Shown here piece by piece: positions 39,494-55,801 of a stretch of DNA of 64,000 nucleotides (position 1 is the stretch's first letter; the number at the start of each line of letters is the position of its first letter). The position numbers and the translations under genes were made by a program. This stretch comes from Styela clava (lineage: Eukaryota), in contig NC_135253.1 of NCBI RefSeq assembly GCF_964204865.1, forward strand, positions 10,106,001 to 10,170,000, in the 5' to 3' direction. The notes beneath the pieces were generated by a model. The model saw nothing but the letters and a program-made list of their open reading frames with translations. It was not told the DNA's origin and searched no databases.

Positions 39494-40373
39494 ATGACAG
39501 AACAAAATCCATGGAGAAATTTAGTAGCTGGTGGCGTCGGTGGTGTAGCCACAGCTGTGAGCGGACATCCATTCGATACAGTTAAAGTTCGTTTGCAAAC
39601 CCATTCACTTCTCGGATCTACACAAATAACGTACAGAAACGCTTTAGACTGTTCAATCAAAACTTTGAAAGGAGAAGGAATAAGAGGTTTCTACAAAGGA
39701 CTGGGAGCACCAATCGCCATTGCTGCGCCCTCGTGGGCTTTGGGTTTTCTTGGTTACGAAATTGGAAAAGATGCTATTCGCTGGTATAGTGGGAATTATA
39801 CAAACAAGTTGTCTCTACTAGAAGTCTTTTTTGCTGGTGCACTGTCGGGTGCGTTTGCTGCAGCTGTTGTAGCTCCTGGAGAAAGAATGAAATGCATATT
39901 GCAAATACAGAGCGAGGTAACAAACAAAAAATATAGCGGGTTGTGGGACTGTTTCAAGACTCTATATCGCACAGGTGGGATAACGAGTATATATCGAGGC
40001 ATTATGTTGACTCTCTTCAGAGAAATTTTTGGAAACGGAGCTTTTTTCGCGACGGTTGAGTATATCAAACGTAAATTCCCAGAAGAAGAAACCTTGAACA
40101 TTCGAAATACAATTTTGGCTGCTGGTACTGGAGGAATGGTTTTCTGGGTAATTGGTATGCCGGTTGACGTTCTGAAGTCTAAATTTCAAACTGCACCAGA
40201 TGGTAAATACAACGCAATCGTAGACGTAGTAAAAGAAATTGCTCGCAATGATGGATTAATTAAAGGGGTTTTATAGAGGTTTTGGTCCGGCTATTTTGAG
40301 AGCATTTCCTTCCCATGCTTGTTGCTTCGTTGCATACGAACAAACTTTACGTTTGTTTGAAACACAATTTTGA
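39494..40373 (+). pseudogene. SLC25A20: Intronless mitochondrial carnitine/acylcarnitine carrier-like gene, frameshifted near its 3' end
   Basis: Three carrier signatures: PFDTVKVRLQ, PGERMKCILQ and PVDVLKSKFQ. The ORF stops at 40276, but FYRGFGPAILRAFPSHACCFVAYEQTLRLF continues in another frame to TGA at 40371-40373. It could be a functional gene with a sequence error. Confidence 0.8.
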
Positions 40374-40811: not shown

Positions 40812-41315
40812 ATAGACTATCTTGTGGGATTAGATAACTTAATGTCTTTATTATGTAGGAAATGTAATATGAAGACACGTAAACCAAAAATTCAAATTGT
40901 CTGTTCAAGTATGTATGTATTTTGCAATTTCTAATTTTAATAGAATAATGTATTCGCCGGTTTTTAGTTGTGTTTCACTAAATTTAGGTACACTGCAAAT
41001 AATTCATTGGTCATTTTTACTTCTTGGTAGTTTTAGGTAAGTTGCAGCAAATAAAAAATATAGTCCCGGACATTAGATAACCTAATGTCTTCATTATGTA
41101 GAAAAAGTAGGCTAATATAAAAACACTGTTGCCAAAAATTGATATAATGCTGGTAATCTATGTTGGTATTTATATATGTTGCAATATTTAATAGAATAAT
41201 GTGTTTCCAGTTTTTAGTGGTGTGTTCCGAAATTTAGGTATGCCAAATAATTAATGGGTCATTTTGTTTTCTCAGCGGTTTTTGTTTAGTTGCAACAATC
41301 AAGCAAGATATAGTC
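40812..41315. repeat. Diverged ~245-bp tandem duplication
   Basis: attagataac(t/c)taatgtctt...ttaatagaataatgt...aaatttaggta...gttgca occurs twice (~40829 and ~41072). Confidence 0.75.
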
Positions 41316-42370
41316 TCGAAAATGGGTTATAGAATATGCAAAAATCAGCTATCAGTAGGCTACTTTGTGATGGCCGGCGATTAAAATATTTGAATCAAAA
41401 TGAACATGTACCGGTAAATCATTTTCATGTAAGCACCAACTCGCAAATTTTGCCAACGTTAAGTGTAATACAAAATGTTTGGGTCATAACTTGGGGGAAA
41501 TTACAACCTGCATTTACTTTACATTTGGACTCCTTGCAGCACAACATGTTCATTATTTAGGACAAGACGAATGTTATGGCGCGATTTTTTTATCTCTCGT
41601 TTATACAGTAATATCTTGTGCAATATCGCAGTCTTTTTGATGTTTTTAAACTTGGCATAGGCGGTACGGTACCTGATTTCTATCGTGCGCAATTTTGTGA
41701 CTAGACTTATTGGAAATCTCGAAATACGATTTTTTGCACTGGGAGCTATTTGTTAAAAGTGTTGTGGAAATTCACAGAGGCGCAGTTCTTACCACTTCAT
41801 GGCAGCTCCTGCCACGAACGTACCACGCCGTCTCTTGCCATGGTTATTAGCAAACCGTGGCAAGTGTGTATATACCGCGGCGATGGCAAAAAGTACTGCC
41901 GTTACCGCGGCAGCTTTGCCATGGTTTCAGGGCAGCTTCGGAAAATATTTACCTGTATGCCTTATTATCATGTATGTTGCAGTATCTGGGGTTTTTGTAC
42001 TATGGATAATGGCAGGTGGGTATGGTATCAATGTGCCTCATTAGTGCGTTGCGACTTTGGTAATTTCAGTTACAGAGTCGTAAGATTTGTGAGCTGTTAT
42101 CCATGCAAGCCTCTGTCTTTTAACAATCACTCTGACTTTTTGATAGCTAGATAGTCTGCCAGTACAGCAGTAGGGTAATGCCAGAATGCGGTACCGGTAA
42201 TCTAGGTACCTTACTGCCCTATTTCTGTATCTCCAAATTTCTAGTATTCACGAGGTAGCCTACGATAAGTTGAATTATATTTTAATTTGGCTGTGTAGAC
42301 TATGTGTACTGAAGTATCTACCAGTATCTTCATATATGTTTAGATCTAGAAACACCTTATTAAGTAATAA

Positions 42371-45300
42371 ATGGCAGATACTTCTGTACTTATTTTAAGA
42401 CAAAATCAGAAAATTTTGATGATTTGTGCATAAAAGTGAATGATTTTTACCAATGCATACTATGTATCGGAGTATCATTTACAACACCAGGTGGCTTACA
42501 ACACCACCTGAAAACTCAACATATCAAATATGCTGTTCATATCATCAATGGGGATGAAAGAGGTATGTATACAGTATTACTGGTACAGCCTATAATTACT
42601 GAATATTTTCGTTGTGATGACTGGTCATTTTATAAGTCGGTATATCTTCAAATATTTTAGCTTTCATTATGCCTTGTAGAAGAGATTGTATGAAACGAGG
42701 AACAAGTGCTTTGACCAGGAGTCACTATCATTGTCCTTCCTGTGAAAAAATATTTGGACGGAGAAATTCTATGATTGACCACAGGAGGCTTACTAAGAGT
42801 AAGGGTTAAAACTATTTTGTGGCTTATTTCTTGCAAATAGAGTACCTAGCTATAACACAGTAACTTTGGAATTTCAATGTTTTGTGTAGATTGTTTGGGT
42901 GTGATTGAAAGTGAAGAAGTCAGGGATATGGACATAGATTCTAAAAACAAAAGTTCAGAAAGTCTATGTGAAGGTAAGCTAATGATTGAAAAGATGTTCT
43001 AATGGATATTTAGCAAGTATTAGGTATTGAGTTGGTGTCCGCTTATAGATATGAGAGCATAAATAATTGTTTATTGCATGTCAAGAAAACTCGTGCATTG
43101 AAATTTTGTGATTTGTATCTATTTCTTTACCACTTTTACATGATTCATTTTCATTCGATATTTTTTTCACATTTTTAGACCTTGTTCGTTTACATACTTT
43201 TACTTTACAGGTACTTTCAACTTTCAATGCATACCTTGTGACAAGCGCTTTAGGCATCAGTCGTCATTGAGGCGACATGCTCAACTTAAACACAATGCAA
43301 CTCAGCTTTTACCGAGCGTATGTGTTGACACATTCAATGGAATCTATATGTTGCTCAAAGTGATTCTGGCCCACTTGCTCCAATTCATGTTCAAAAGCAC
43401 ACATTGAAACAAAAAATTATGTGCACTGATGACGACTGTATTTCAATTATCAAAGCCATTTCAACAGTCAATCCAGGAATCCAATGTCGACATTTGGACT
43501 CTATCTCTGAATCTTCAATTTTAACGACAAACAAACTGCAACTGTCATCGCTAAACCGACTAAGGGAATTTAATATATCGAATGATTCGTCGGTTCAATG
43601 GTGCAAAAATATGAAGGAAATCAGTGAAAAGGATTGCTGCACTCTTGTAGCCCTTGTTGATTTTTCAACAATGGGTTTCGAAACAAGAACAATCTATTTT
43701 TCCGTTTACACTGAAAAAATTCAATATTTTGCACCATTGAAGAGGGTAAGAGTTTCTTTCAATAAAGATAATGGGGAATTTTCGTGTCATTGTATGGTTT
43801 AAACTTCTTATTGGTATAAAATACGAATTTTGTATTTCGACCAAATAATTTTGCCTAAGTCGAAACGTTAGATAATAGCCTGTGATATTATACCCAGATA
43901 TTTAAATCATGCTTCTATGTTTTATTCCTTAACAACTATTTTTACGAGTTATTATAAATGTTTGCACAGCAACTGAATTATTCATCAAGGAATGTGCTGA
44001 ATGTGGAATGGAAGTTAGATATCAAGAATATGAAGAAGGTTTTCATAATTTTGACAATAGTGTTTTATTGAGTCTCAAGTTGTGTTGTTATTTACTGCGT
44101 GGACTGAAAGTGAGTTATTGATTATTGCCGTTTACTGGTCTATTATGGACAAAGCAGCTCAAAGGCGTGTGCTAAATTCACATAAATATTTGTTCTATTG
44201 CATTATTTGTTCTGGTCAAATATGGTTTGCAAGGTTATACTATAAAATACAATTTTAATTCCACTGTTTAGAATCATATCTCAATCGAGAGCAATCTAAA
44301 AATGTTGTTCATCGAAACTATTCCTTATAATAAGATCAGGAATGCGTTCTTGCATTTTTTGGCTCTCCAAGACTATCAATACGACTTTTGTTGCTTGAAA
44401 TGTGGAATATATCCAACAGTGCTGATATGTGATGGTAATTGGAAAAACACGTGCAGAAGACCAGGTAACATTAGCAACATTATTTGGCTGCGCATTTAAA
44501 ACATAGCTGATGAAATATCACAAGCTGTAAATTTGGTATTTCGTTTACATACAGTTGGAGCCGTTGACAAAACCCAAAATACTTGTGACCTCATTGATGT
44601 AGACGCAACTTGGGAAAAATATCAGATGGAAATTATAGGAAGAGGATTTTATGGTCAGGAATACATTTACTTACTTGAATTATGCGTACAGATCTATCTC
44701 GTGGACAATCCGACAGTATCAATACCACGTTGTTTTGTTTAAAAACATTCAAGTGGCCTAGTTTATCATAATTATGGAAATTTGACACTAAAATTATTAA
44801 TTAACTTTATTTGGTTTTTACCTAGCTTTTATTTTAAATTTTTCTTTGCTTTTGTTCACGTTTCACATGTTATTTGATAGTTTCTGTATTAGTTTATGTA
44901 TCCAGTTCACTGATCTCAACCTTATGAATAACCAGGCTGTAAGGAGAATCCATGGAAAGTGGAAATAATGTACAACACAGTTGCACCTTGGATATCTCCA
45001 GAATGCCGATTTTCAAGTGAAGTCCCAAATACAGAGCATAGGAAAGGATTTATTCTTAACAAGCCAGTTGTTGAAAAGCCTCTAGCCTACTCCAAAGTCT
45101 CTCATGAAGATATTCTCCAAGCTATAAAGTATAAACTCTCCTCTTGTAGGCATACTTTTTTCTACCTTTTTGTCTCACAAATAGTCAAAAATGACCAAAT
45201 GCCTTGATTTAAAAACAAAAATTTGACACTGCAATAATTACAATAGTTTTTGTTTTAATTTTGGTGTTTATACTGTACAGATATATATATTTTAAAACTA

Positions 45301-48300
45301 TAGCTATATATTTAAAAACTATTATTTGAGGCAATTGCTCTTATTTTGCAGACATCTGATTCTCGTTTGATAGACTTGTGTGAAGTCTTGGGTATAAGTA
45401 GCAAAGGGAGTTCAGAAGACCTTGTTAATACTTTGAATGAGCTGGTTCTGTTTAAGGATGTATGCCCTAAGATGTACAAAAGCATAAAACATTGCGGTGG
45501 TTGGTATTATTGTTTTATTAAAGAAATGTTTATCTTACTTAGGTCTAATGTCAATGGTTGCATTTTTGCTGTATTTATCTTTTCTACATTATCGCTATGA
45601 TTTATTACAATGTAATACTAAAGAGCAATGGATAACTTTTCTTATTTATATCTTGTGCAGCTGACAATGATTTGGGATTTTGCTGCATGATCAAATGGCT
45701 TGAAAGAGATTTTCATCATTATTTTTTAGGAGGGATTGTACATTTTCGTTGCCCACATGGGATATGCTATTATATGAAATATCTTCTAAGACAGGGAAGT
45801 GCTAGAGATTATATTGACGGAATATTGTCCCTGAAGAGACAACCTCATGCTATAATATCTGACATTGCTTCCCAAGTGAGTTCTTTTTAGTTTAAGTCAC
45901 TGTGGATATACATATTTTTAAATATTCTATATTTGATATACAAAAGTATTCACAAATAATGTGTAATTTATATTAATATTAAGGGAACTTTGATACTGTG
46001 TATTAAACTGCAGGTCCTTTCTCCTTGTTTACTTTCTACTTCGGATCCGTATGTGGTACTCCGAATATGCGCTATTCGATTAAGTTATCTCTTGTATTGT
46101 TTGAAGAAGTTAGACCATGATCTAACGAAAGCTCACAAATATACTTACTGTTTCGTTGAAAGAGATCATTTCACTTATATTAATATGTTTTGTTCATTCC
46201 TCCAACTTTGGTCAGAATACTCTTCAAACACTATTATCTGTTTTCAGGTAGCCCATCATGGCGAGGCTAGAAAAAGGGGTATTTTTGGGCCTGATAAAGG
46301 AATGCTGTTTGCATATACTGACAAAAATCTTGAATTGGAAAAACATGGCTCTCTACCACAGGTCAAACTGGATGCTCATAAAAAATACAGCCTCTGTGAT
46401 AGGTTCCATACAAGATCGAAGAAAAAGACCGCAGAAAATTCTTTTCGCAACTTGAAGTACTGCTCTGATTTGAACATAAATACCAGTGTGGCAGAGCAGG
46501 AAAATGCTCACATGGCAAAAGATAGGCAAGCTTCCATCTTATTCAACCACCCCTCTTTTTTTTAATATATTTATATTGTGAAGTGAACCAGGGTATGGTG
46601 GCCTCGAAATGACAGTACAAGAGCTTCCGAAACACTGTTGTATATGTGACCTAAATCAATGCACAATATTCAGAAAACTGATGACTGAGGTTTTCGAGGA
46701 ATATCTTTCAACAAACCAATTTTTTGTCCAGAGGGTTTGTTTGTTTGCTAGATGGGAAATTTCTCCAGTTCAGATACCAATTGTGGCATGTCGTATTTGA
46801 CATTTTTCATACTATTCAGTGATTGGCCATTAATACACAAATGCTTCAATCGAGGATGTATTGATAGTTTGCTTATTGAAAAGATATTGTTAATGGTAGA
46901 TGGATCATATTACTATTTAACTCATGTTGTGATGTACATTGTCGATTATTTTGAGGCAATAAAGCATGACCATTTAATGTTAATAGGCAGAAAATTAATT
47001 TGATGCTATGACACGTATAAAAAAACTCAAGATAGTTGGAAATTGATATTTTACTGAGAAGAATCGCTTGAATATTGACATGTTTTAAGAGTTCATGCTG
47101 TGCGAATATGTTTGGTAAAATGCTTTACAACCTTACTTGTAGATCTTCAGTTTGCTCTATGGACACTACCAATTTCCTTTGGCTTTCGCGAGTTAGCATT
47201 AACCTGCGTAATAAAGACATAAACTCAACATATGAAAAAAAAATGAAGACTCAAGTTGGAAATAAAATTCGGAGGAATCATGAAGGAATTGCTATACCAG
47301 ATGTTAAAGGTACATGATTTTCATGTTATTGAGTAATGTGGATATATTTTCTCACTACACACCTCATTTTAGGTAACGTTTTAGATGGAACCAGTGGATC
47401 GGTCACAGAGGTATGCATGTATTATTAAATTTGGTTTCATGTGAATGCATAGTATTGTAAAATAAAAGTAGAATAAGACATTTACGATTTATAAAGGTCT
47501 GCTTTTGCGGTTTCCGACAATATCATTAATCAAGTATAAAAGATATCTTTAAAATGTTAATGGCTTTATGTTATCCCATTCTTTCGAGTTATCGTAAATG
47601 TACAAACCTGTAAATGAATTGTAGCAATTTCTTAGTTATACTATGTAATGCTTTTTTCTAATATAAGATTTAGGAAGGAATTAAACAGAATTCTATTATA
47701 TGTGTCTTATAATTCATGCTACTACCTACCTACATCGATTATATTTCCTGAGGTTTGAAAATTTAGGAAGAATTACTCATCGACGAAGATGATGAAGCTA
47801 TGAATGAGGTAGTTGCCAACCCTGAAGACAATGTGTACTCTGAAAATATAGTGAGATAATTTTTTTCTTGCTCTTACCGCTTTTGTATTATAATGCATTG
47901 TATCGAGTTTGATATGTGGAGTTATGAATTTTTTGCATGATGGTATTGATCAAATTATCTATGCCAGGAGTCTCCAAAACGCTGCCCATGAGGCAATTTT
48001 TCGGCCTGCGTCACGGTTGAGATTTTTCCACAAAACTGAAATAGTACGATGTTCACTATGAGTGAGTTTTATCATGTTATTTGACATCAGGAGTCTGGCC
48101 TGACAAACTATAATAGGTGAAACAAACATTCCCCCCTATTCCACTTTATTGCGCTCATATTTCATTGTATTGTTTTAATTAACTTGTAAATTCAAGAATT
48201 TCATTCTGCATTATTTATTATAACGAAATAAACGAGTTTCGGTCACATAATTGTGTTCGAAGAAAGCTTCGCAAAGTTAATTTATTGTGTCATATTTTTT

Positions 48301-51300
48301 TTCAAATTCCTACTTCCTATTAAAGCAGAGTGGAATGACTACTGGAACAGTGTCACAATATCAAGAAGATCAGACATTTTGGTAAGTATTTGCATTTAGA
48401 GGATGAGTATACCATGTGTTTCAACGATGTAATGATTAAAATGAATATTTAACGATGCTTTATATGGTACATTCTTCAATCTCATAATATGCTGAAGCCT
48501 TCAAAGAAGTTTATATTTCTATTAAAATGTCATCCACAATTTTCAGTCTTTCTTACTTTATCTTCATACTTATGGGTCAAACTTTTCATTGCAGTTCAGC
48601 AAAAATGAAATCAACTTCATGCAGTGATGGTAATATTTATGACTCCGAGAATAAAGGTGGGAGTTACTTGGTTTATCGTTAAGATGTCTTGGTATAATAC
48701 TTATCTCTAATTATTCATTTACATTTTTCAGATAGTGATGAATCAAGAAAATGTCTTTTTCTGCCTGCCAAATTTAATGGTAAATTTTATAATATTCATT
48801 GTATTGAATTTTTCTTTAAAATTTGATATATTTTGGTAATTGTCTGAATGATAGTTTTTTGAGCAATAGCTGATCTCCTTCTATATGACAATACTTTGAT
48901 TTTATGAGGTTATTATGAGGCGTTATTATTCAATGAATGATTCAGTTTTGTTATCAGTCATAGCGTTGCAATTACGTGTTACTGATAATGCTATGCATAA
49001 TATTATCTTAAGAACTCAGTGTGTACATAACAAAGGAACTGTACAGCCATGTTCATAGTTTGGAAATCACTCAGATGTTATGCATGTACACAAGTACTAA
49101 TTTATACAGGAGTATTACCATCAGAATGTAACCATCATTTCTAGTTTGTGTAAGATTGTTTATAAAATTGAACTTATAGTTTTTCAATAATTATTTTTAT
49201 TTCAAATGCTACCAACTTTGCTGAAGATAATAGATGGAATAATTGCAGCTCTTTGTCATAAGGTATGTCTTTTAGTATTGTTCATCTCTGTATTCCATGT
49301 GGAACTGTGACATCTCCATAAATTATATTTCAGTCCGAAATTTCTTATTAGTGACTCAGTTTATTATTATGTTAATCTTTCTAAATCAACTTGTTTTTAG
49401 TGGACCAGTCATACTCAATATAGCGCTCTGTCTGCATTATATTCCACAATGTGGTTTTGGGAGGGGATTTATCGTCGAAAGTACAAAAGTTTGGTAAAAT
49501 AACATGTTTATTATTTTTGATCATTGTTTATTCGCTTTCGTTACCATCCTATTTTACATCCAGGCCAAGTTGACTATTGAAAAACCAACTATGAGTGCTG
49601 TGAACCATGGCAATCACTGGACTCTAATGGTAGGTAAATTGCTAGATCTTTGTTAATTTAAATGAAATTCTTTAGGAAAATTTTCTTCTCAAATGCAATT
49701 ACAAAATGTTTCAATATATCACGTCAAAACAAATATGGCATATTCTGTATTGTATTGCTCTTCAAACCAGAAATTCTTCTACTCTTGTGAACAAAGTTTC
49801 ATGTTTTCAGATTACAGATCCATCTCAAGGGAGTGTCATTATTTATGACCCTGTTGGCCATGAAGAGAGTTATGCTGAAACGCTGATGGAGAATTGGAGG
49901 TTTGTGGTTTTCTGCTTGACTAAATGATTATTGGCTTGTAAACACTCACAGATTCATTTTAAATTATCATGCCCTTATTGAGTTCAACGATAGAACATCA
50001 ATGTTTTAGTCATGCATTCAAATCTCTACTAGTGTTATCTGAATTTTAAAACATCAAAAACAGATTACCGAAACTGTATGGATCGTACGAGTTTTTTGCA
50101 CTGAGATTGCAAGCTAGGTATGAAAGCGCATATTAGCAAGAATATGCAGTTCTCAGAACACTTCAAAAAAAAGTTAAGGATCTAGAAATGAAATTGTTCC
50201 TATGTGTTGTGACTTGTGGGACTAATCAGGGCTGTTCTTTTTTTTACGTTTTCTCCCAGGAAATTTTGGAAATACCATGGAGGTGACAAAAGAGATTGGA
50301 GACTGTTAACAAACAAGCATAGGGAACAAGAAGATGGGTTCAATTGTGGAATTTTGGTTGTGAAGGTACATCGGGTCCAATTTGTTTTTATAGTGGTATT
50401 ATTAAACTGATAAGGATGCACACAGGCTCATTACGGTAGATCTTTAAATTTTCATTTATATTTGTGAGTAAACATTTACTACTAGTAGTACTTTATATTG
50501 ATACCACCACCATTCAACTGGAACCTTATTTTTAAATCATCTCATTGGTGCAAATCTATAGAAATATGAGTTGTTTTATTTTTTTACATTCTAGGCTGCC
50601 GAAGCAATCTTAACAGGTTGTACAACGGATTTCAATCATTCGACAGGCATCTGTAATGTCTACAGAATCCATTTTGGAGACCTTCTGTTGGAAGCCACAG
50701 GTGCATTATTATTTTATTAACTAGGTCTAAGCATAAGTCATTTTTATTCAAGTGTGGAGAGCAGTGCTGGAAGTCGAGTAACAACTAGCACCATAACATC
50801 TATGCGGTCACAGATATGTTGGTAGCACACAGCTATATTTTGATGATATTTAGAACTTTCTTTTGAACATGGCTAAGTGGGTTATAAAACTCAGAGCCCA
50901 GAGCTTTAATTTGATGATGTTGAAAAATGGAATGGAAAAGGAAGTTAATTAAGTATCGGATTGAGGTCAATATTGATCGTGTATGCAAAGAAATTTTACT
51001 CATTTTTGCGGTTGGTTAGAATCTGAGGAGGAATATACATGACTATATTAGTTAGGTATTTGCAATCCTACATTTGTTTTCCTTCATCTTTTAGATGTTG
51101 ATGAGCTGGCACACTTTTGTGTGGGCTGTAATGGCAGGACTGCCCCTGATGGTGGCACACTTTGGGTAAGGTCAAACATTTTCCTTATGGATGCAGTTTT
51201 GATGGATAAAGTAAAGTAATAATTTTGTTGTAGGTCGAATGTGATGGATGCGAAAGGTGGTGCCACCAATATTGCGCAGATTTTGCGGGTAACGAAGATT

Positions 51301-51323
51301 TTTTCTGTGAACACTGCACATAA
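42371..51323 (+). pseudogene. Zisupton-type polyprotein gene: C2H2 fingers, partial SWIM, Cys cluster, KDZ transposase with SAP insert, Ulp1 (C48) protease, PHD finger; contains lesions
   Basis: Exons ~42400-42562, 42661-42798, 42890-42973, 43211-43791, 43970-44109, 44272-44464, 44555-44653, 44936-45129, 45352-45499, 45730-45875, 46248-46525, 47143-47309, 47373-47410, 47767-47850, 48329-48381, 48595-48656, 48732-48779, (49013-49127 unresolved), 49227-49262, 49401-49493, 49564-49629, 49811-49899, 50260-50365, 50595-50700, 51095-51165, 51234-51323. Motifs: SHYHCPSC, RYQEYEEGFHNFD, VLICDGN, APWI, CPHG, IISD, DRFH, NTSVAEQ, NHW, YDP, QEDGFNCG, WVECDGCERWCHQYC...FFCEHC. AATAAA at 51351. The start codon is uncertain. 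Confidence 0.85.
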
Positions 51324-52146
51324 AACTTAAGTTTTTGTGTAATTTTCTTTAATAAAATTTAATAACATGCACAATGTCATACTTCTTTTTTGGAATTTGA
51401 TGTTCGCTAGTTGAGGTTCCTCATCTGCCTGTAAATATTATAGAAATATTCGAGAATTGTCTTAACAAATAGTTGACATATCTAAGTGGCTTTGTCATAA
51501 AAGGATTCCAGTGTCAACGATGGAGATAGTGAGTGTGCAAGAAGCTAGCTGTGGTACACAATCAGCTTTAAATTATTGCAACAACAAACCCTTATGTTGG
51601 GTAATTTATGAGAGCATTACCCTCTCTCTTTTTTATCGCATGCAATCCATTTCTTGTTTTCACGGATTGCCCTCACCCCCCACTACACCCCTAAAACGAG
51701 AGAGACTGGCATGTTTTCATTTTAAGTTAAAAGTTATCTGTCTGTATTGGGAAATCAGAAACGAAGAGAAAATAATATGTTGTTACTGCATATAATTAAT
51801 GCAACTGGTTATAATTTGTCCCTGAAAAAATGGATGTAGTGCCACATTATAAAATACTTCCATTCCCGTTTTCTTACAAAGAGTGGCTTTTTCGGGGTAA
51901 AGGAAAAATTCAAGTGGTACCGGTTCGCAGAAAGTAGAAGGTTGAGAACCCCTACTGTAGATGAATCGCCTAGCAGGGTAAATGCAATTTTAATCAAACC
52001 CAACCGACACAATTTTACTCTGGTAGTACTGCGATCTAATTTGAATCAATATGACTAAAAAAGACACAGCGCAAATGATATACAACATTATTTATTGCCA
52101 GAGGAAGTAATGGCACCTTACTTCCAACCAGCCATTACTTCCTAAC

Positions 52147-52895
52147 CAGAGTTGGATCAATTACACTAATTCAGTTCAATTACAAATACAACTACTCCTG
52201 TACTCCCTTAAATGTTTCAATTACATTACAATTACTCCGTGCAAAAAATATCAAACTGCATTTACAATTATAACATTTTGGTTCGTATTTACATTTTCCC
52301 TTGCTCAAGAACTGTTGGATTGCACTTAATGAAGATTAGGCTGCGAAAAGTTTCTGAACCCAATAAATTTCTTCATGCTGTATAAAAGTTATCCGCAATT
52401 GAAAAAACTCTTTCTGACGGGGCTGATGTTGCTGTAATTCAGCGTGGGAAATTTTTCTGATTTCTTCTTCCAATACATTAATTGGTCTTCATCAAATTGC
52501 AAAATTTCTTCCCCCAAATAGCTATTTACATCACTTTCTGATTTTCTTGGTCCTTTCCTCTATTTATAGATATAGATGGGGAGAACATCTCTTCAAGTGC
52601 GTTTGATGAAGCCTTTTTTGAAGTTGTTACAGCCTGCCTCAGTGCTGCTCAAAGATTTAAAAAACTCTGACAATGGTGCAAGAAGTGGTTCAACACATGT
52701 TTCGGAAGAGTTTGTTTAATGTTCATCCATTTTCAAAATACTAAGATTTAGTCTAATTGAAAGTGTAATTGAGCCAGAATTTTAGCAAATTACAGTTATG
52801 ATTACACAGAATGAAAATGCCTCCATTCAGTCATTACATTACAATTACATAAAAAACTGTAAATAATACCATAAATTACAAATGATCCAACTCTG
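52147..52895 (-). mobile_element. Internally deleted hAT (Ac-like) element nested in the right arm of the Zisupton
   Basis: TIRs cagagttggatca / tgatccaactctg with aattac subterminal repeats. A minus-strand remnant ATSAPSERVFSIA...RNLLGSETFRSLIFIKCN matches the hAT C-terminal dimerisation motif. Near-TSD cttcctaac / cttccaac. Confidence 0.85.
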
Positions 52896-53959
52896 CTTCC
52901 AACTGCACCCTACCGGTACTTCAAAGCAATATACACCCAATGCTGACTTCATTTGTAACGCCAAATCATTTCCTTATTACTCTTGAATGCAAACAAAACA
53001 ACAAACAACACTGAATGCTAATCTCGGTTCTTCAGTTGATGGCAGCAACCAACTTGTCGCCGCGCTCCCCGTTATCCCGCCGTGGTAATGCGCAATTAAC
53101 CACAAGGTTCCCCGCTATCTTCCACTGTTCATGGCGAGAAATCTTTCGCTACCACAGGTTATTCCTACCTGCCGTAACCGCGGCAGCTCCTGCCGTGGTT
53201 ACGGCAGCTCTTGCCGTGGTTACGGCAGCGTAACTACGGTTCATGGCAGTATAATTTCACCTGCCGTGGTTTTCAATTTGCTGCCGTGGTACCCCGCCTC
53301 ACGCCATTGTTTGTGGCAGCTTGAAAGTTAGCCGCCGTGGTTTGGTCATTGTGGCCATGGTTTGGAGATTCCGCCATGGTTTTGCGGCAGCTTCAGATGC
53401 CGCGAAATACTTAAAACTGCACTTGAATTCACAAGTAATATTTTTTCGATGTAATTTCTTGGACATGGATAAGTAATTGAAATCGAGATAAAACAATAAG
53501 CAGATATTAATTAATATCATGAGTAGCCTATGTTTATATTTTAGTAGACTACTTTGAAAAAAAATGGAAAGATCTATTGAACATCCCTGCATGCTGCATC
53601 CAACTAATCCCATACGATACAGCGATATGGAATGGTAACCGGACGAGAGGCCGTAGTTCGGCTTTCCTCTCTCCCGGGATAAATATATATAAATTCTTAT
53701 CCAAATAATTTCTGTAAGCTACCATCAGAATAACATTTTGCATGAAACAAGCTTCATAAATTCTAGTTTAAAGGAATAATGGAGCTTCTTTCTGTATTTT
53801 GAGTCCCAAATAGTTGCTAAGTACCATACTAATATTGTAATTATTGAATAAAAATACATCCATTGGAAAGATGAAAACCGCAATGTTTGAACTGTAAGAA
53901 TTTGTTATTCATCCTCTCTTTTCTTACTTTTGTCTGTTTGTATTAGCCATTAACAAGAA

Positions 53960-55801
53960 ATGGCTCCTATATGTAATAAGTTTAAACCTAAGCATATGAA
54001 ATATGAGATTTTATGTGCAATAAAATCATGTCAATTGCGAGGATTACTTCAAACTGTCAAGTGGCTTGCCGAGTTGTCAGTATCTTTAAAATGTGATCCT
54101 GAAACACCTCAAAGAGGTGATGGCTGTGGGAAATTTGTTATTGGTTTTGATGTAGATGCTGATGGACAACATACTAATCAAAAACCATCTGATAATTTCA
54201 CTCTGGCGAAGTCCTATTTTGATCTTGGTGAATATGATAGATGTGCACATTTTCTTTCCCAAGATACAAGTAAGTTAGGATACTTCTTGCATGTGTATTC
54301 ACGTTATCTGTCTGCTCTAAAGACCAAACAAGTGAGCCAGATTGACAATCACAATATAGCAGAAAGATCTTTGTCGAAAAATGAAGACTTACGAACACTT
54401 CGTGTCGAACTTTGTAAAAAACACAAAAATAAGGAACTAGATTCTTTTGCTCTGTATTTGTATGGCATTGTGTTAAAGAAAACATCAGATGGAGCTGCAC
54501 AACAAAATGAAGCAGTTAACATACTATGTCAATCGGTGCGTGAATATCCAATGAACTGGAGTGCTTGGTATGAATTATCAACTGTTGTTGCTGATCAAGC
54601 AATGTTGGCAACTCTCCATCTTCCAAAACACTGGATGAGGGATTTTTTTCTGGCACTCACTAATGTTGATCTTATAAATACTGATGATGCTATCCCAATT
54701 TATAATGAACTGAAATTAGCAGGATTTGCTGAAAGTACACACATTAAAACACAAGAAGCAATGGCTCATCATAATAAAAGAGAATTTGACGAAGCAATCA
54801 CAATTTTGGAAGACATCAGAAAAGATGATCCATTCAGAATTGAGCATATGGATATATTATCTAACATGTACTATGTCAAAGGCCGTCGAGCAGAATTAGC
54901 TCATTTGGCACATCATTGCACTCAAGTTGACAAATATAGAGTAGAAACATGTTGCATTATTGGAAATTATTATAGCATAAGGTCTAACCATAACAAGTCT
55001 GTTATGTATTTTCAAAGGGCTCTCAAACTTGACCCTCATTATCTTGGTGCATGGACGCTAATGGGCCATGAATATACAGAGGTGAAAAATACATCTGCAG
55101 CAATACAAGCTTATAGAAATGCTGTGGATTTGAATAGAAGAGATTATAGAGCTTGGTATGGTCTTGGCCAAACATACGAGTTACTCAAAATGCCTTCTTA
55201 TTCTTTATATTATTATAAACAAGCTCATAGACTACGGCCATTTGATTCAAGAATGCTCATGGCTTTGGGTGACACTTATGAAGCACTGCAAAGACCTGAA
55301 GAAGCAAAGATGTGTTTCAGGAAAACAGTTGCGGTAGGAGATATTGAAGGAATGGCCCATGTTAGACTTGCCAAGTTGTACAAGACAGAAGACAAAAAAG
55401 ATTGGGCTGCACATTATTATGATCGTTTTGTGCAACAGCTTGAAGAACATGGCATTGTTGAAGGTACATCTGCCCATACAGAAGCCTATTTATATCTTGC
55501 GAATTATCATTTAAAAACATCTAAAAATCTTGATGCTGCTACTCATTATGCTCACAAATGCCGTGAATACCCTGAGGTTCGAGAAGATGGCATGGCAGTT
55601 CTGCGTCAGGTATCTCAAATACGTGCTTGCGCAGGCTCAAGGAAAGAAGAAAGGCTTCCTGTCAATTTTACACAACCTACCCCAAGTCACTTGCAAGATA
55701 GTGTTGGCATGGACACAGATTCTCCCAGTGCCAATTTTGCTCCAATGAAACTAACATTTTCACCGGGTCAGGCAGATTCTGACACAAGCAATTTGATGTA
55801 A
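53960..55801 (+). CDS. CDC23: Cell division cycle protein 23 (APC/C subunit APC8), intronless CDS, 613 aa
   Basis: N-terminal RGLLQTVKWLAEL and LAKSYFDLGEYDRCAHFL. TPR region DKYRVETCCIIGNYYS...AWTLMGHEY.E.KNTSAAIQAYR...RDYRAWYGLGQTYE. Confidence 0.97.
   Translation: MAPICNKFKPKHMKYEILCAIKSCQLRGLLQTVKWLAELSVSLKCDPETPQRGDGCGKFVIGFDVDADGQHTNQKPSDNFTLAKSYFDLGEYDRCAHFLSQDTSKLGYFLHVYSRYLSALKTKQVSQIDNHNIAERSLSKNEDLRTLRVELCKKHKNKELDSFALYLYGIVLKKTSDGAAQQNEAVNILCQSVREYPMNWSAWYELSTVVADQAMLATLHLPKHWMRDFFLALTNVDLINTDDAIPIYNELKLAGFAESTHIKTQEAMAHHNKREFDEAITILEDIRKDDPFRIEHMDILSNMYYVKGRRAELAHLAHHCTQVDKYRVETCCIIGNYYSIRSNHNKSVMYFQRALKLDPHYLGAWTLMGHEYTEVKNTSAAIQAYRNAVDLNRRDYRAWYGLGQTYELLKMPSYSLYYYKQAHRLRPFDSRMLMALGDTYEALQRPEEAKMCFRKTVAVGDIEGMAHVRLAKLYKTEDKKDWAAHYYDRFVQQLEEHGIVEGTSAHTEAYLYLANYHLKTSKNLDAATHYAHKCREYPEVREDGMAVLRQVSQIRACAGSRKEERLPVNFTQPTPSHLQDSVGMDTDSPSANFAPMKLTFSPGQADSDTSNLM

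What the first reader, a model, noticed from the sequence alone, without database searches (positions are those of the whole stretch)
41310..53680. Hidden ~12-kb Zisupton/KDZ transposon with a ~26-exon transposase-SUMO protease gene
Seen in sequence: about 25 small exons join with consistent phases into one long reading frame that the ORF track shows only as scraps. The order is three C2H2-type fingers, a SWIM start, a Cys cluster (CAECG..RYQE..GFHNF; CCLKCG), acidic catalytic candidates (VLICD, IISD, NTSVAE) with CPHG and DRFH, a SAP-like helix pair (LIDLCEVLGISSKGSSEDLV), an acidic linker, a protease and a PHD. Established: this is the architecture of Zisupton (KDZ superfamily, source of vertebrate HMGXB3), a poorly characterised intron-rich DNA transposon class. 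Inference: this is a lineage-specific family, clearly divergent from the fish-type motifs as I recall them.
Basis: partly seen in the sequence, partly recalled or inferred. Interest (0 to 1): 0.85.

Follow-up and report, generated by a model that had tools for sequence, protein, structure and literature searches.

The report
Broken Zisupton transposon copy in Styela
The stretch is a real, young cut-and-paste DNA transposon of the known Zisupton type in the sea squirt Styela clava. This particular copy is a damaged, non-autonomous member of a six-copy family that also has about 460 miniature derivatives.

Summary
The element is window 41777-53425 (11,649 bp), not 41310-53680, and is flanked by an 8-bp target-site duplication, AATTCACA.

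The genome is Styela clava. It holds six long copies with 0.5-1.1% substitution divergence, each with the same ends and its own perfect 8-bp duplication. The 30-nt 5' end occurs 467 times; the two near-identical short copies read are 447-bp miniature elements.

An intact copy (C4:376187-389411) gives a 27-exon, 1,273-codon open frame. The domain order is three C2H2 fingers, SWIM-like, CxC4, an RNase-H-like DDE core with a SAP-like insert, an acidic linker, a Ulp1/C48 protease and a PHD finger.

The window copy keeps 25 of the 27 exons but does not read as one frame. It has +8 nt in exon 1, -1 nt in exon 4, a 1.3-kb deletion (end of exon 4 plus exon 5), +7 nt in exon 9, and a 0.42-kb deletion of exon 19.

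RNA-derived contigs from three studies show 14 of the predicted splice joints. The family protein is 30% identical (E 5e-112) to teleost Zisupton-type proteins. Pfam's KDZ core model never hits.

The scan had already found a different Zisupton family elsewhere in this genome. Verdict: a new member of a known kind.

The parts
41769..41776 (.). Left copy of the 8-bp target-site duplication, AATTCACA
   Evidence: the same 8 nt directly follow the 3' end at 53426-53433.
41777..53425 (+). The transposon copy (11,649 bp): an internally deleted, frameshifted, non-autonomous Zisupton
   Evidence: similarity to the C14 copy begins and ends exactly here; six copies share these ends. Searches give the structural comparison.
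53426..53433 (.). Right copy of the target-site duplication, AATTCACA
41777..41926 (+). 5' terminus (GAGGCGCAGTTCTTACC...) with two GCCATGGTT subterminal motifs. The first 69 bp are shared at 96-99% identity with the miniature elements.
   Evidence: The 30-nt terminus occurs 467 times in the genome and 0 times in the reversed control.
53192..53425 (+). 3' terminus (...AAACTGCACTTG) with six GCCRTGGTT motifs. It forms an imperfect inverted repeat with the 5' end (12 of the first 20 nt match; core GCAGTT).
   Evidence: The motif occurs 10 times in the window against 0.5 expected, and 8 of the 10 are subterminal.
42371..42562 (+). Exon 1 (ATG, first C2H2 finger). Broken by a window-private 8-nt insertion at 42379-42386.
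42661..42804 (+). Exon 2 (second C2H2 finger)
42890..42973 (+). Exon 3 (acidic spacer)
43211..43793 (+). Exon 4 (third C2H2 finger and start of the SWIM-like CxC...CxH module). It has a 1-nt deletion after 43349 and is truncated at 43793 by the ~1.3-kb deletion.
   Evidence: The NCBI model P0052 runs into a stop here.
43785..43793 (.). Junction (9-bp microhomology) of a ~1,305-bp deletion. It removes the last 95 nt of exon 4, intron 4, exon 5 (218 nt) and its donor. This is about 100 codons: the rest of SWIM and the start of CxC4.
   Evidence: all five sister copies carry the segment; profile positions 318-420 are missing in the window.
43970..44109 (+). Exon 6 (CxC4 cysteine cluster: CAECG...RYQEY..GFHNF)
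   Evidence: PF18717, 27.0 bits.
44272..44464 (+). Exon 7 (CCLKCG; VLICDGNW, holding the first catalytic Asp, D537 of P0053)
   Evidence: invariant column; Asp lies on strand 533-538.
44555..44653 (+). Exon 8
44936..45145 (+). Exon 9. Broken by a window-private 7-nt insertion at 45123-45129.
45352..45499 (+). Exon 10 (SAP-like helix pair: LIDLCEVLGISSKGSSEDLV)
   Evidence: SAP, E 0.008; the model's residues 632-695 match solved SAP domains at Z 4.1-4.5; joint 45499>45730.
45730..45875 (+). Exon 11 (HFRCPHG; AIISD, holding the second catalytic Asp, D765). NCBI models use an upstream acceptor at 45661.
   Evidence: joint seen in three RNA studies.
46248..46525 (+). Exon 12 (CDRFH; NTSVAEQ, holding the catalytic Glu, E852). 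It has a GC donor.
   Evidence: joint 46525>47143; only 24 relatives among 1.84 billion proteins.
47143..47309 (+). Exon 13
47373..47410 (+). Exon 14
47767..47850 (+). Exon 15 (acidic linker)
48326..48381 (+). Exon 16 (with an alternative NAGNAG acceptor at 48329)
48595..48656 (+). Exon 17
48732..48779 (+). Exon 18
   Evidence: An RNA contig of X8 runs from 48779 into the start of exon 19, which the window lacks.
49008..49013 (.). Junction of a ~0.42-kb deletion that removes exon 19 (125 nt, N-terminal part of the protease domain). This puts the transposase and protease frames out of register.
   Evidence: loose ends.
49227..49262 (+). Exon 20 (IIDGIIAALCHK)
   Evidence: matches Clavelina VMEGVLKALVLK.
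49401..49493 (+). Exon 21 (..YSTMWFWEG..)
49564..49629 (+). Exon 22 (NHGNHW, holding the protease His)
49811..49899 (+). Exon 23 (IIYDP, holding the protease Asp)
50260..50365 (+). Exon 24 (EQEDGFNCG, holding the protease Gln and Cys)
50595..50700 (+). Exon 25
51095..51165 (+). Exon 26 (first half of the PHD finger: CVGC...)
51234..51323 (+). Exon 27 (second half of the PHD finger: CDGCERWCHQYC...CEHC) and the stop codon
   Evidence: (X8).
52144..52898 (.). A ~755-bp unrelated repeat with 19-nt inverted ends. It lies in the 3' non-coding part of the element and is carried by the copies that keep this region.
   Evidence: dozens of copies at 80-88% elsewhere; region aligned in the sister copies.

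Best explanation
Window 41777-53425 is one insertion of a young Zisupton (KDZ-class) cut-and-paste DNA transposon family of Styela clava.

Intact sister copies (about 13.2 kb) carry one 27-exon gene for a protein of about 1,273 aa. Its parts, in order:
- three N-terminal C2H2 fingers;
- a SWIM-like module and a CxC4 zinc module (inferred to recognise DNA or chromatin, perhaps the subterminal GCCRTGGTT arrays);
- an RNase-H-like DDE catalytic core (D537, D765, E852 of P0053) with a SAP-like insert. This core is inferred to cut the element at its ends and insert it with 8-bp staggered cuts;
- an acidic linker;
- a C-terminal Ulp1/SENP-type cysteine protease and a PHD finger. Their role is inferred only: chromatin targeting or relief from SUMO-dependent silencing.

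The window copy has intact ends and an intact target-site duplication. It has three frameshifting small indels and two deletions that remove exons 5 and 19. It cannot make the enzyme, and could move only if supplied in trans by one of the copies that still read open.

Shown: copy structure, duplications, exon structure, splicing, domain matches and the predicted fold. Inferred: catalysis, DNA-binding sites, the role of the protease-PHD module, and present-day activity.
For: Copies and ends:
- Sharp shared boundaries and 8-bp duplications occur at six long copies and at 3 of 4 miniature copies checked.
- The 30-nt 5' end occurs 467 times, against 0 for the control.
- The left flank is single-copy.
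- Copies differ by 0.5-1.1% substitutions. Exons differ by 0.44% and non-exon DNA by 0.90%.

Gene:
- The C4:376187 copy gives 27 exons, 3,822 nt and no internal stop. The C1 and C8 copies are also open.
- The window lesions are documented.
- 14 GT-AG/GC-AG joints appear in RNA-derived contigs of three studies and none in the DNA run.

Domains and relatives:
- CxC4 is hit in the window exon and in P0053.
- C48 and PHD are hit in the window-encoded P0045.
- The family profile matches SENP1/Ulp1 at E 1.6e-10.
- Ciona's 1,283-aa relative has CxC4 + C48 + PHD.
- Fish Zisupton-type relatives match at E 5e-112 and 6e-58.
- Atlas neighbours are all KDZ-associated.

Fold:
- In the AlphaFold model, most of residues 370-920 have pLDDT of about 80-95, with lower-confidence dips.
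- Its best 26 structural matches are all DDE transposases or integrases. ISCth4 is first (Z 9.2, 208 aligned); foamy-virus integrase core is next (Z 8.0).
- The model also matches ZSWIM8 (Z 5.2) and SAP domains (Z 4.1-4.5).

Literature: Zisupton makes 8-bp duplications (PMC12730594). SWIM + CxC4 + KDZ is described as canonical Zisupton (10.1101/2024.08.15.608186). Zisuptons are multi-exonic (PMC9297572).
Against: - Pfam's KDZ transposase model PF18758 gives no hit at E <= 1 on any exon, on the family proteins, or in a six-frame scan of the genome. In that genome scan the controls did not ring either, so it is uninformative.
- Foldseek against PDB found nothing for the core.
- The VIA Z-scores (7-9) are in the range the tool calls middling.
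- Terminal inverted repeats are short and imperfect (12 of 20).
- No bona fide named Zisupton sequence (platyfish G3KL21 or Repbase) was available for direct comparison.
- No excision, empty site or polymorphism was shown.
- The exon 19>20 and 20>21 joints of the full-length mRNA were not seen in contigs. Contigs keep 49008-49492 unspliced.
Confidence: 0.9

Rival explanations
1. A domesticated host gene (an HMGXB3-like, transposase-derived gene) rather than a mobile element. This is how RefSeq currently presents the copies.
For: NCBI names the copies 'uncharacterized protein', 'HMG domain-containing protein 3-like' and 'insulinoma-associated protein 1a-like'. The family is transcribed and spliced. 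Exons are about half as divergent as non-exon DNA.
Against: There are six dispersed copies with identical ends and different 8-bp duplications. The shared terminus occurs 467 times, in miniature elements. The window copy carries five disabling lesions.
Confidence: 0.03
2. The window copy is itself an intact, autonomous element with one continuous open frame.
For: 25 exons with good splice sites are present. With a tandem acceptor 4 nt downstream (48736), the 3' half can be read from the SAP exon to the PHD stop without a stop.
Against: The 5' half is broken by +8, -1 and +7 nt indels and lacks exon 5. Sister copies and the Clavelina homologue show that the frame is normally kept by exon 19, which is deleted here. 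RNA contigs use the 48732 acceptor, not 48736. NCBI splits this copy into separate short models: the 136-aa P0052 and the LOC120344994 isoforms of 232-336 aa.
Confidence: 0.03
3. A member of another 8-bp-duplication or SWIM-bearing superfamily (hAT, P, or a Ulp1-carrying Mutator-like element) rather than Zisupton/KDZ.
For: The top structural match is ISCth4, an IS256-family transposase; that family is the bacterial kin of Mutator (my knowledge). SWIM fingers and Ulp1 domains also occur in MULEs (my knowledge). hAT and P elements make 8-bp duplications (my knowledge). PF18758 does not hit.
Against: No hAT, MULE or P-element Pfam domain hits at E <= 0.1. CxC4, a KDZ-associated module, is above its cut-off. 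All ten Atlas neighbours that carry a family are KDZ-associated. There is strong full-length similarity to teleost proteins with CxC7 and F-box, the platyfish Zisupton marks. The Z-scores of the different DDE folds are within about 1-2 units of each other, so the order does not discriminate.
Confidence: 0.04

Closest known systems
[quoted passage not shown] 2012; here represented by teleost proteins P0038 and P0069)
   Same: Both are multi-exon, roughly 11-13-kb cut-and-paste elements with 8-bp duplications. Both proteins have SWIM-like, CxC4, DDE core with SAP-like insert, and Ulp1 protease. P0038 also has a weak, sub-threshold PHD hit (18.6 bits, cut-off 24). Identity is 30% over 866 aa (E 5e-112). 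The length and exon number of the platyfish element are from my memory, not from a held paper.
   Different: No CxC7 cluster or F-box was found in the tunicate proteins. The Styela, Ciona and Clavelina proteins scanned have extra N-terminal C2H2 fingers. Divergence is deep (about 30% identity). Terminal inverted repeats are short and imperfect here.
Ciona intestinalis LOC104265342 (XP_078495125.1, 1,283 aa) and Clavelina lepadiformis relatives
   Same: The domain order is the same: C2H2, SWIM-like, CxC4, core, SAP-like, C48, PHD. Identity is 38-47%. Only 24 relatives of the core exon exist among 1.84 billion proteins; the four longest looked up are from Styela clava and Ciona intestinalis.
   Different: These are annotated only as uncharacterised genes. 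Their mobility (ends, duplications) was not examined here.
KDZx1 of Cryptococcus deneoformans (Zisupton clade; bioRxiv 10.1101/2024.08.15.608186)
   Same: 8-bp duplications, a SWIM + CxC4 + transposase arrangement, and weak or no terminal inverted repeats. It is the only cited relative with observed transposition.
   Different: It is fungal, 6.4 kb, and has a Pfam PF18758 hit. No Ulp1 or PHD module is reported for it.
The second Styela clava Zisupton family (18.5-kb element at C4:~16.47 Mb; earlier scan note s1-809848)
   Same: Same genome, and the same transposase-protease-PHD architecture according to that note. Its core exon is 58% identical to ours.
   Different: It is a different family: only 2 copies of the core exon, a larger element, and no shared ends were tested.
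Ulp1-carrying Mutator-like elements of plants (KI-MULEs; from my own knowledge)
   Same: A DDE transposon associated with a C48 protease domain and a SWIM-type finger.
   Different: A different transposase family with 9-10-bp duplications. In these the protease is usually a separate captured gene, not a C-terminal fusion.

Membership tests
Zisupton (KDZ class) | 8-bp target-site duplications | tested here: met
   Six long copies and three of four miniature copies have perfect 8-bp duplications. The criterion is from PMC12730594.
Zisupton (KDZ class) | CxC4 cysteine cluster N-terminal to the core | tested here: met
   PF18717 hits the window exon 43933-44118 at 27.0 bits (cut-off 26.9) and P0053 at 31.3 bits.
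Zisupton (KDZ class) | SWIM-type zinc finger | tested here: inconclusive
   There is no Pfam SWIM hit. Intact copies have FSCLCPTSGMSSTCYHE (CxC..CxH), and the model's residues 250-356 match ZSWIM8 at Z 5.2. In the window the motif is cut after CxC by the 1.3-kb deletion.
Zisupton (KDZ class) | KDZ transposase domain (Pfam PF18758) | tested here: not met
   No hit at E <= 1 on exons or on full-length family, Ciona or fish proteins. The genome scan was uninformative. None of the teleost relatives carries PF18758 in the precomputed Pfam hits, and the four scanned here do not hit it either, so the model seems not to cover this clade.
Zisupton (KDZ class) | Sequence homology to recognised fish Zisupton proteins | tested here: met
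   P0053 against P0038 gives E 5e-112. P0053 against P0069 (C48 + F-box + CxC7, the domains defined on platyfish Zisupton, PMC12062965) gives E 6e-58. No named reference sequence was compared directly.
Zisupton (KDZ class) | RNase-H-like DDE catalytic core | tested here: met
   D537 and D765 are invariant and E852 is at least 90% conserved in 21 sequences. They sit on strand 1, after strand 4 and on a helix of the model. The 26 best structural matches are DDE transposases or integrases, Z 5.5-9.2.
Zisupton (KDZ class) | Terminal inverted repeats | tested here: inconclusive
   Only 12 of the first 20 nt match between the ends. There are arrays of GCCRTGGTT near both ends.
Zisupton (KDZ class) | Multi-exon transposase gene fused to a Ulp1 SUMO-protease domain | tested here: met
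   The 27-exon model, spliced contigs, C48 in P0045 and the family profile against SENP1 at E 1.6e-10.
Autonomous (self-mobilising) element | Uninterrupted transposase reading frame in this copy | tested here: not met
   The window copy has five disabling lesions. The sister copies at C4:376187, C1 and C8 are open.
HMGXB3 lineage (Zisupton-derived vertebrate gene) | Specific relationship to HMGXB3 | not tested
   There are only NCBI product names, 'HMG domain-containing protein 3-like'. PMC3424704 says that Zisupton-derived genes exist in vertebrates but does not name them. No HMGXB3 sequence was compared.

The most novel reading that the evidence does not exclude
The family is still transposing in living Styela clava. 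Three copies keep a 1,273-1,275-codon frame. The mRNA is spliced in three independent RNA studies. About 460 miniature elements carry a near-identical 5' end (96-99% over 69 bp) and intact 8-bp duplications. If so, it would be an active Zisupton in a non-vertebrate chordate. It would also give a tractable system to ask what the fused Ulp1-PHD module does, for example countering SUMO-dependent silencing, and a possible new vector for ascidian transgenesis.
Probability: 0.4. Interest if true: 0.55.

Novelty: new member of a known kind. Interest (0 to 1): 0.35.

Why it matters
Zisupton is a poorly characterised, intron-rich DNA transposon class. Among the papers read here, only one study, in Cryptococcus, observed transposition directly.

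This family offers a complete natural series in one chordate genome: open copies, decayed copies with mapped lesions, and a large, very young population of miniature elements that share the ends.

It also corrects the RefSeq annotation. There, the copies appear as ordinary genes under names such as 'HMG domain-containing protein 3-like' and 'insulinoma-associated protein 1a-like'.

The result for the window itself is ordinary: one dead copy of a known kind of element.

Tried and rejected
1. Tandem acceptor. I first explained the frame break between transposase and protease by a tandem acceptor at 48736, which does give an open 3' half. I rejected it. Sister copies, an RNA contig and the Clavelina homologue show a 125-nt exon 19 that the window has lost, and RNA contigs use the 48732 acceptor.
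2. Frame of exon 21. I first took the frame 'QSYSIQRSVCIIFHNVV..' as the protease frame (profile score only 2.0). I rejected it. The Clavelina sequence matches the other frame, 'YSTMWFWEG'.
3. PF18758 (KDZ). It gave no hit on exons, on full-length relatives or in the six-frame genome scan.
4. The search for homologous proteins with the family alignment returned only one further Ciona protein.
5. Foldseek against PDB with the 1,049-aa model found only zinc-finger matches, none significant. The exhaustive VIA search was needed.
6. Empty site. I looked for an empty site or haplotig using the left flank. It is single-copy in the assembly.
7. Bohne et al. 2012 is not in the held library, and no held paper links HMGXB3 to Zisupton.
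9. Joined protein. Searches used single exons by reference or database proteins. Joins were made only inside scripts, to count stops and phases.

Full report
**What the window is.** The window is AT-rich eukaryotic DNA with no N runs. An exact look-up of a protein encoded here returned XP_077967886.1 of Styela clava on a 25,446,714-bp contig. That is the length of contig C4 of the window's own assembly (377 Mb, 380 contigs).

**Checking the observation.**
- Three exons give weak C2H2 hits and 45316-45597 gives a weak SAP hit.
- The protease and PHD exons are too short to score singly. The NCBI protein built from them on this very copy (P0045, mapped exactly to 48738-51320) hits Peptidase_C48 above its cut-off and PHD just below it.

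**It is a transposon, and its limits.**
- A DNA search of the genome found near-identical copies.
- Against the C14 copy, similarity starts exactly at 41777 and stops exactly at 53425.
- At both places in both copies, the flanks carry different perfect 8-bp direct repeats.
- After the rest was fetched, six long copies were defined, all starting GAGGCGCAGTT... and ending ...CTGCACTTG:
  - window copy, 11,649 bp, duplication AATTCACA;
  - C4:376187-389411, 13,225 bp, CCTCTTCG;
  - C1:23275804-23288953, 13,150 bp, CACTTTGT;
  - C8:11750050-11765398, 15,349 bp, GTGTTACG;
  - C18:1495105-1508560, 13,456 bp, GCACTTGG;
  - C14:17678951-17688855, 9,905 bp, CCCATTTT.
- Exactly these six loci carry the core exon at 99-100% amino-acid identity.
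- The first 69 bp and last 160-190 bp also bound a family of 447-463-bp miniature elements. Two of these are 99% identical to each other, and three of four checked have 8-bp duplications.
- The 30-nt 5' end occurs 467 times in the genome with at most 2 mismatches, and never in the reversed control.
- The left flank of the window insertion is single-copy.
- The ends are only weakly inverted (12 of 20). A motif GCCRTGGTT is packed near both ends: 10 in the window against 0.5 expected, 8 of them subterminal.

**The gene.**
- One HMMER search of 1.84 billion proteins with the largest core exon (46248-46526) found only 24 relatives. Of the four longest looked up, one is from Styela clava and three from Ciona intestinalis.
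- Further searches added Clavelina and teleost proteins.
- Ciona XP_078495125.1 (1,283 aa) shows the full architecture with significant Pfam hits: CxC4, Peptidase_C48, PHD.
- RefSeq has modelled the Styela copies as ordinary genes. Examples are LOC120326054, 'HMG domain-containing protein 3-like', and on the window copy 'insulinoma-associated protein 1a-like' and LOC120344994.
- I mapped these proteins back exactly with a small spliced mapper.
- For the C4:376187 copy, NCBI's exons 1-18 were combined with four further pieces. These were a 125-nt exon seen in an older NCBI model, an RNA contig's continuation from exon 18, the Clavelina alignment, and the protease-PHD exons.
- The result is 27 exons, 3,822 nt and 1,273 codons with no internal stop. 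All internal junctions are AG/GT except one GC donor.
- A conserved downstream acceptor of exon 11, the one seen in RNA, would give 1,250 codons.
- The joined protein was used only inside scripts to count stops.

**The window copy is broken.** I transferred the model to the other copies, made base-level alignments and compared block structure.
- The C1 and C8 copies are open.
- The C18 copy has a 7-nt deletion in exon 23.
- The C14 copy lacks exons 13-22.
- The window copy has five private disabling lesions:
  - an 8-nt insertion three codons after the ATG;
  - a 1-nt deletion in exon 4, which makes one exon look like two overlapping frames;
  - a ~1,305-bp deletion at 43785-43793, removing the end of exon 4 and exon 5. 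This is about 100 codons: the rest of the SWIM-like module and the start of CxC4;
  - a 7-nt insertion in exon 9;
  - a ~0.42-kb deletion at 49008-49013, removing exon 19.
- This explains why NCBI split this copy into short models.
They do not join into one frame.

**Expression.**
- The run finder listed runs holding this stretch. I took three small runs from three studies, which the tool only guesses to be RNA, and one large one that I treated as a DNA run.
- Contigs of the three small runs show 14 intron-removing joints with GT..AG ends (one GC..AG) exactly at the predicted boundaries. These are 45499>45730, 45875>46248, 46525>47143, and so on through 51165>51234.
- The DNA run shows none of them.
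- The contigs carry the sister copies' letters, so expression cannot be assigned to the window copy.
- The 19>20>21 joints of a full-length message were not seen. Contigs keep 49008-49492 unspliced.

**Family.**
- Literature: Zisupton makes 8-bp duplications, while Kyakuja makes 7-bp ones (PMC12730594). Zisuptons are multi-exonic and up to about 1,400 aa (PMC9297572). SWIM + CxC4 + KDZ domain with 8-bp duplications is called the canonical Zisupton structure (bioRxiv 10.1101/2024.08.15.608186). Platyfish Zisupton defines the CxC7 domain and has an F-box isoform (PMC12062965).
- Here, the family protein P0053 has CxC4.
- It aligns over 866 aa with teleost P0038 (30% identity, E 5e-112). P0038 has the same SWIM-like, CxC4, core, SAP-like and C48 order, plus a weak PHD hit.
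- It also aligns with teleost P0069 (E 6e-58), which carries C48 + F-box + CxC7.
- ESM Atlas neighbours of the core are all KDZ-associated clusters (scores 0.81-0.89, leads only).
- Against this, Pfam's PF18758 never hits this clade, the fish proteins included.

**Fold.**
- An AlphaFold model of P0053 with a 21-sequence alignment has mean pLDDT 65. Most of residues 370-920 are at about 80-95, with lower-confidence dips.
- Foldseek found nothing for the core.
- An exhaustive structural comparison put 26 DDE transposases or integrases on top. ISCth4 gave Z 9.2 with 208 residues aligned. Foamy-virus, RSV and HIV integrase cores, Tn5, Mu, TnsB, IstA and piggyBac gave Z 5.5-8.0.
- The same comparison matched ZSWIM8 to residues 250-356 and solved SAP domains to residues 632-695.
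- The invariant D537 lies on the first strand, D765 just after a strand, and E852 on a helix. This is the usual DDE geometry.
- The Z-scores are middling by the tool's own note. The uniform kind of the matches is the argument.
- The family profile also matches SENP1/Ulp1 catalytic domains at E 1.6e-10.

**Age and selection.** Pairwise substitution divergence among the six copies is 0.5-1.1%. It is 0.44% in exons and 0.90% elsewhere. This suggests that part of the divergence arose while the gene was under constraint.

**Verdict.**
Its refuting case, a single-copy syntenic gene, is excluded.
- The observation needs correcting in three ways: the limits are 41777-53425, the window copy is a decayed non-autonomous copy, and the 'two exons' around 43350 are one.
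- An earlier follow-up of this scan (s1-809848) described a different, 18.5-kb Zisupton at about C4:16.47 Mb. I saw its core exon at 58% identity. Zisuptons in this genome are therefore not new to the scan.
- Present-day activity, the DNA sites bound, and the role of the protease-PHD module remain inferences.

Noticed in passing
window 52144-52898: A ~755-bp unrelated repeat with 19-nt inverted ends (CAGAGTTGGATCA...) sits in the 3' non-coding part of the Zisupton, in a region that aligns with the sister copies. Dozens of copies at 80-88% identity lie elsewhere in the genome.
   Followed up: partly
window 42379-42386, 45123-45129, 50207: The window-private 7-8-nt insertions look like imperfect tandem copies of the adjacent 7-8 nt. 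They could be replication slippage, or footprints left by excised elements that make 8-bp duplications.
   Followed up: no
G000:C18:1495105-1509029 (L015, L023): The C18 copy is inserted at GCACTTGG, directly beside ...CTGCACTTG and other fragments of a related miniature element. It is a nested insertion into its own family.
   Followed up: partly
L024:1712-2158, L025:1476-1922, L026, L027: The miniature elements share the 5' 69 bp of the long element at 96-99% identity (88-99% in the four read), but their 3' 160-190 bp at only 82-86%. They also hold an ~90-nt piece resembling the PHD exon 26 region: 73% identical and inverted in L024/L025, 80% and in the element's own orientation in L027.
   Followed up: partly
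G000:C4:16470299, C9:13788382, C6:21557194, C5 (five loci): Further Zisupton lineages are present in the same genome. One is a two-copy family with a core exon 58% identical to ours. Older copies also exist, some with stops.
   Followed up: no
window 39494-40276 and 53960-55801: The insertion lies between two long uninterrupted ORFs. One is a mitochondrial-carrier-like protein (260 aa) and the other a TPR protein resembling CDC23/APC8 (613 aa). Both are named from the look of the translation only.
   Followed up: no
window 46526-47142: This is a GC-AG intron (donor AG|GCAAGC). It is used in RNA-derived contigs of three studies.
   Followed up: yes
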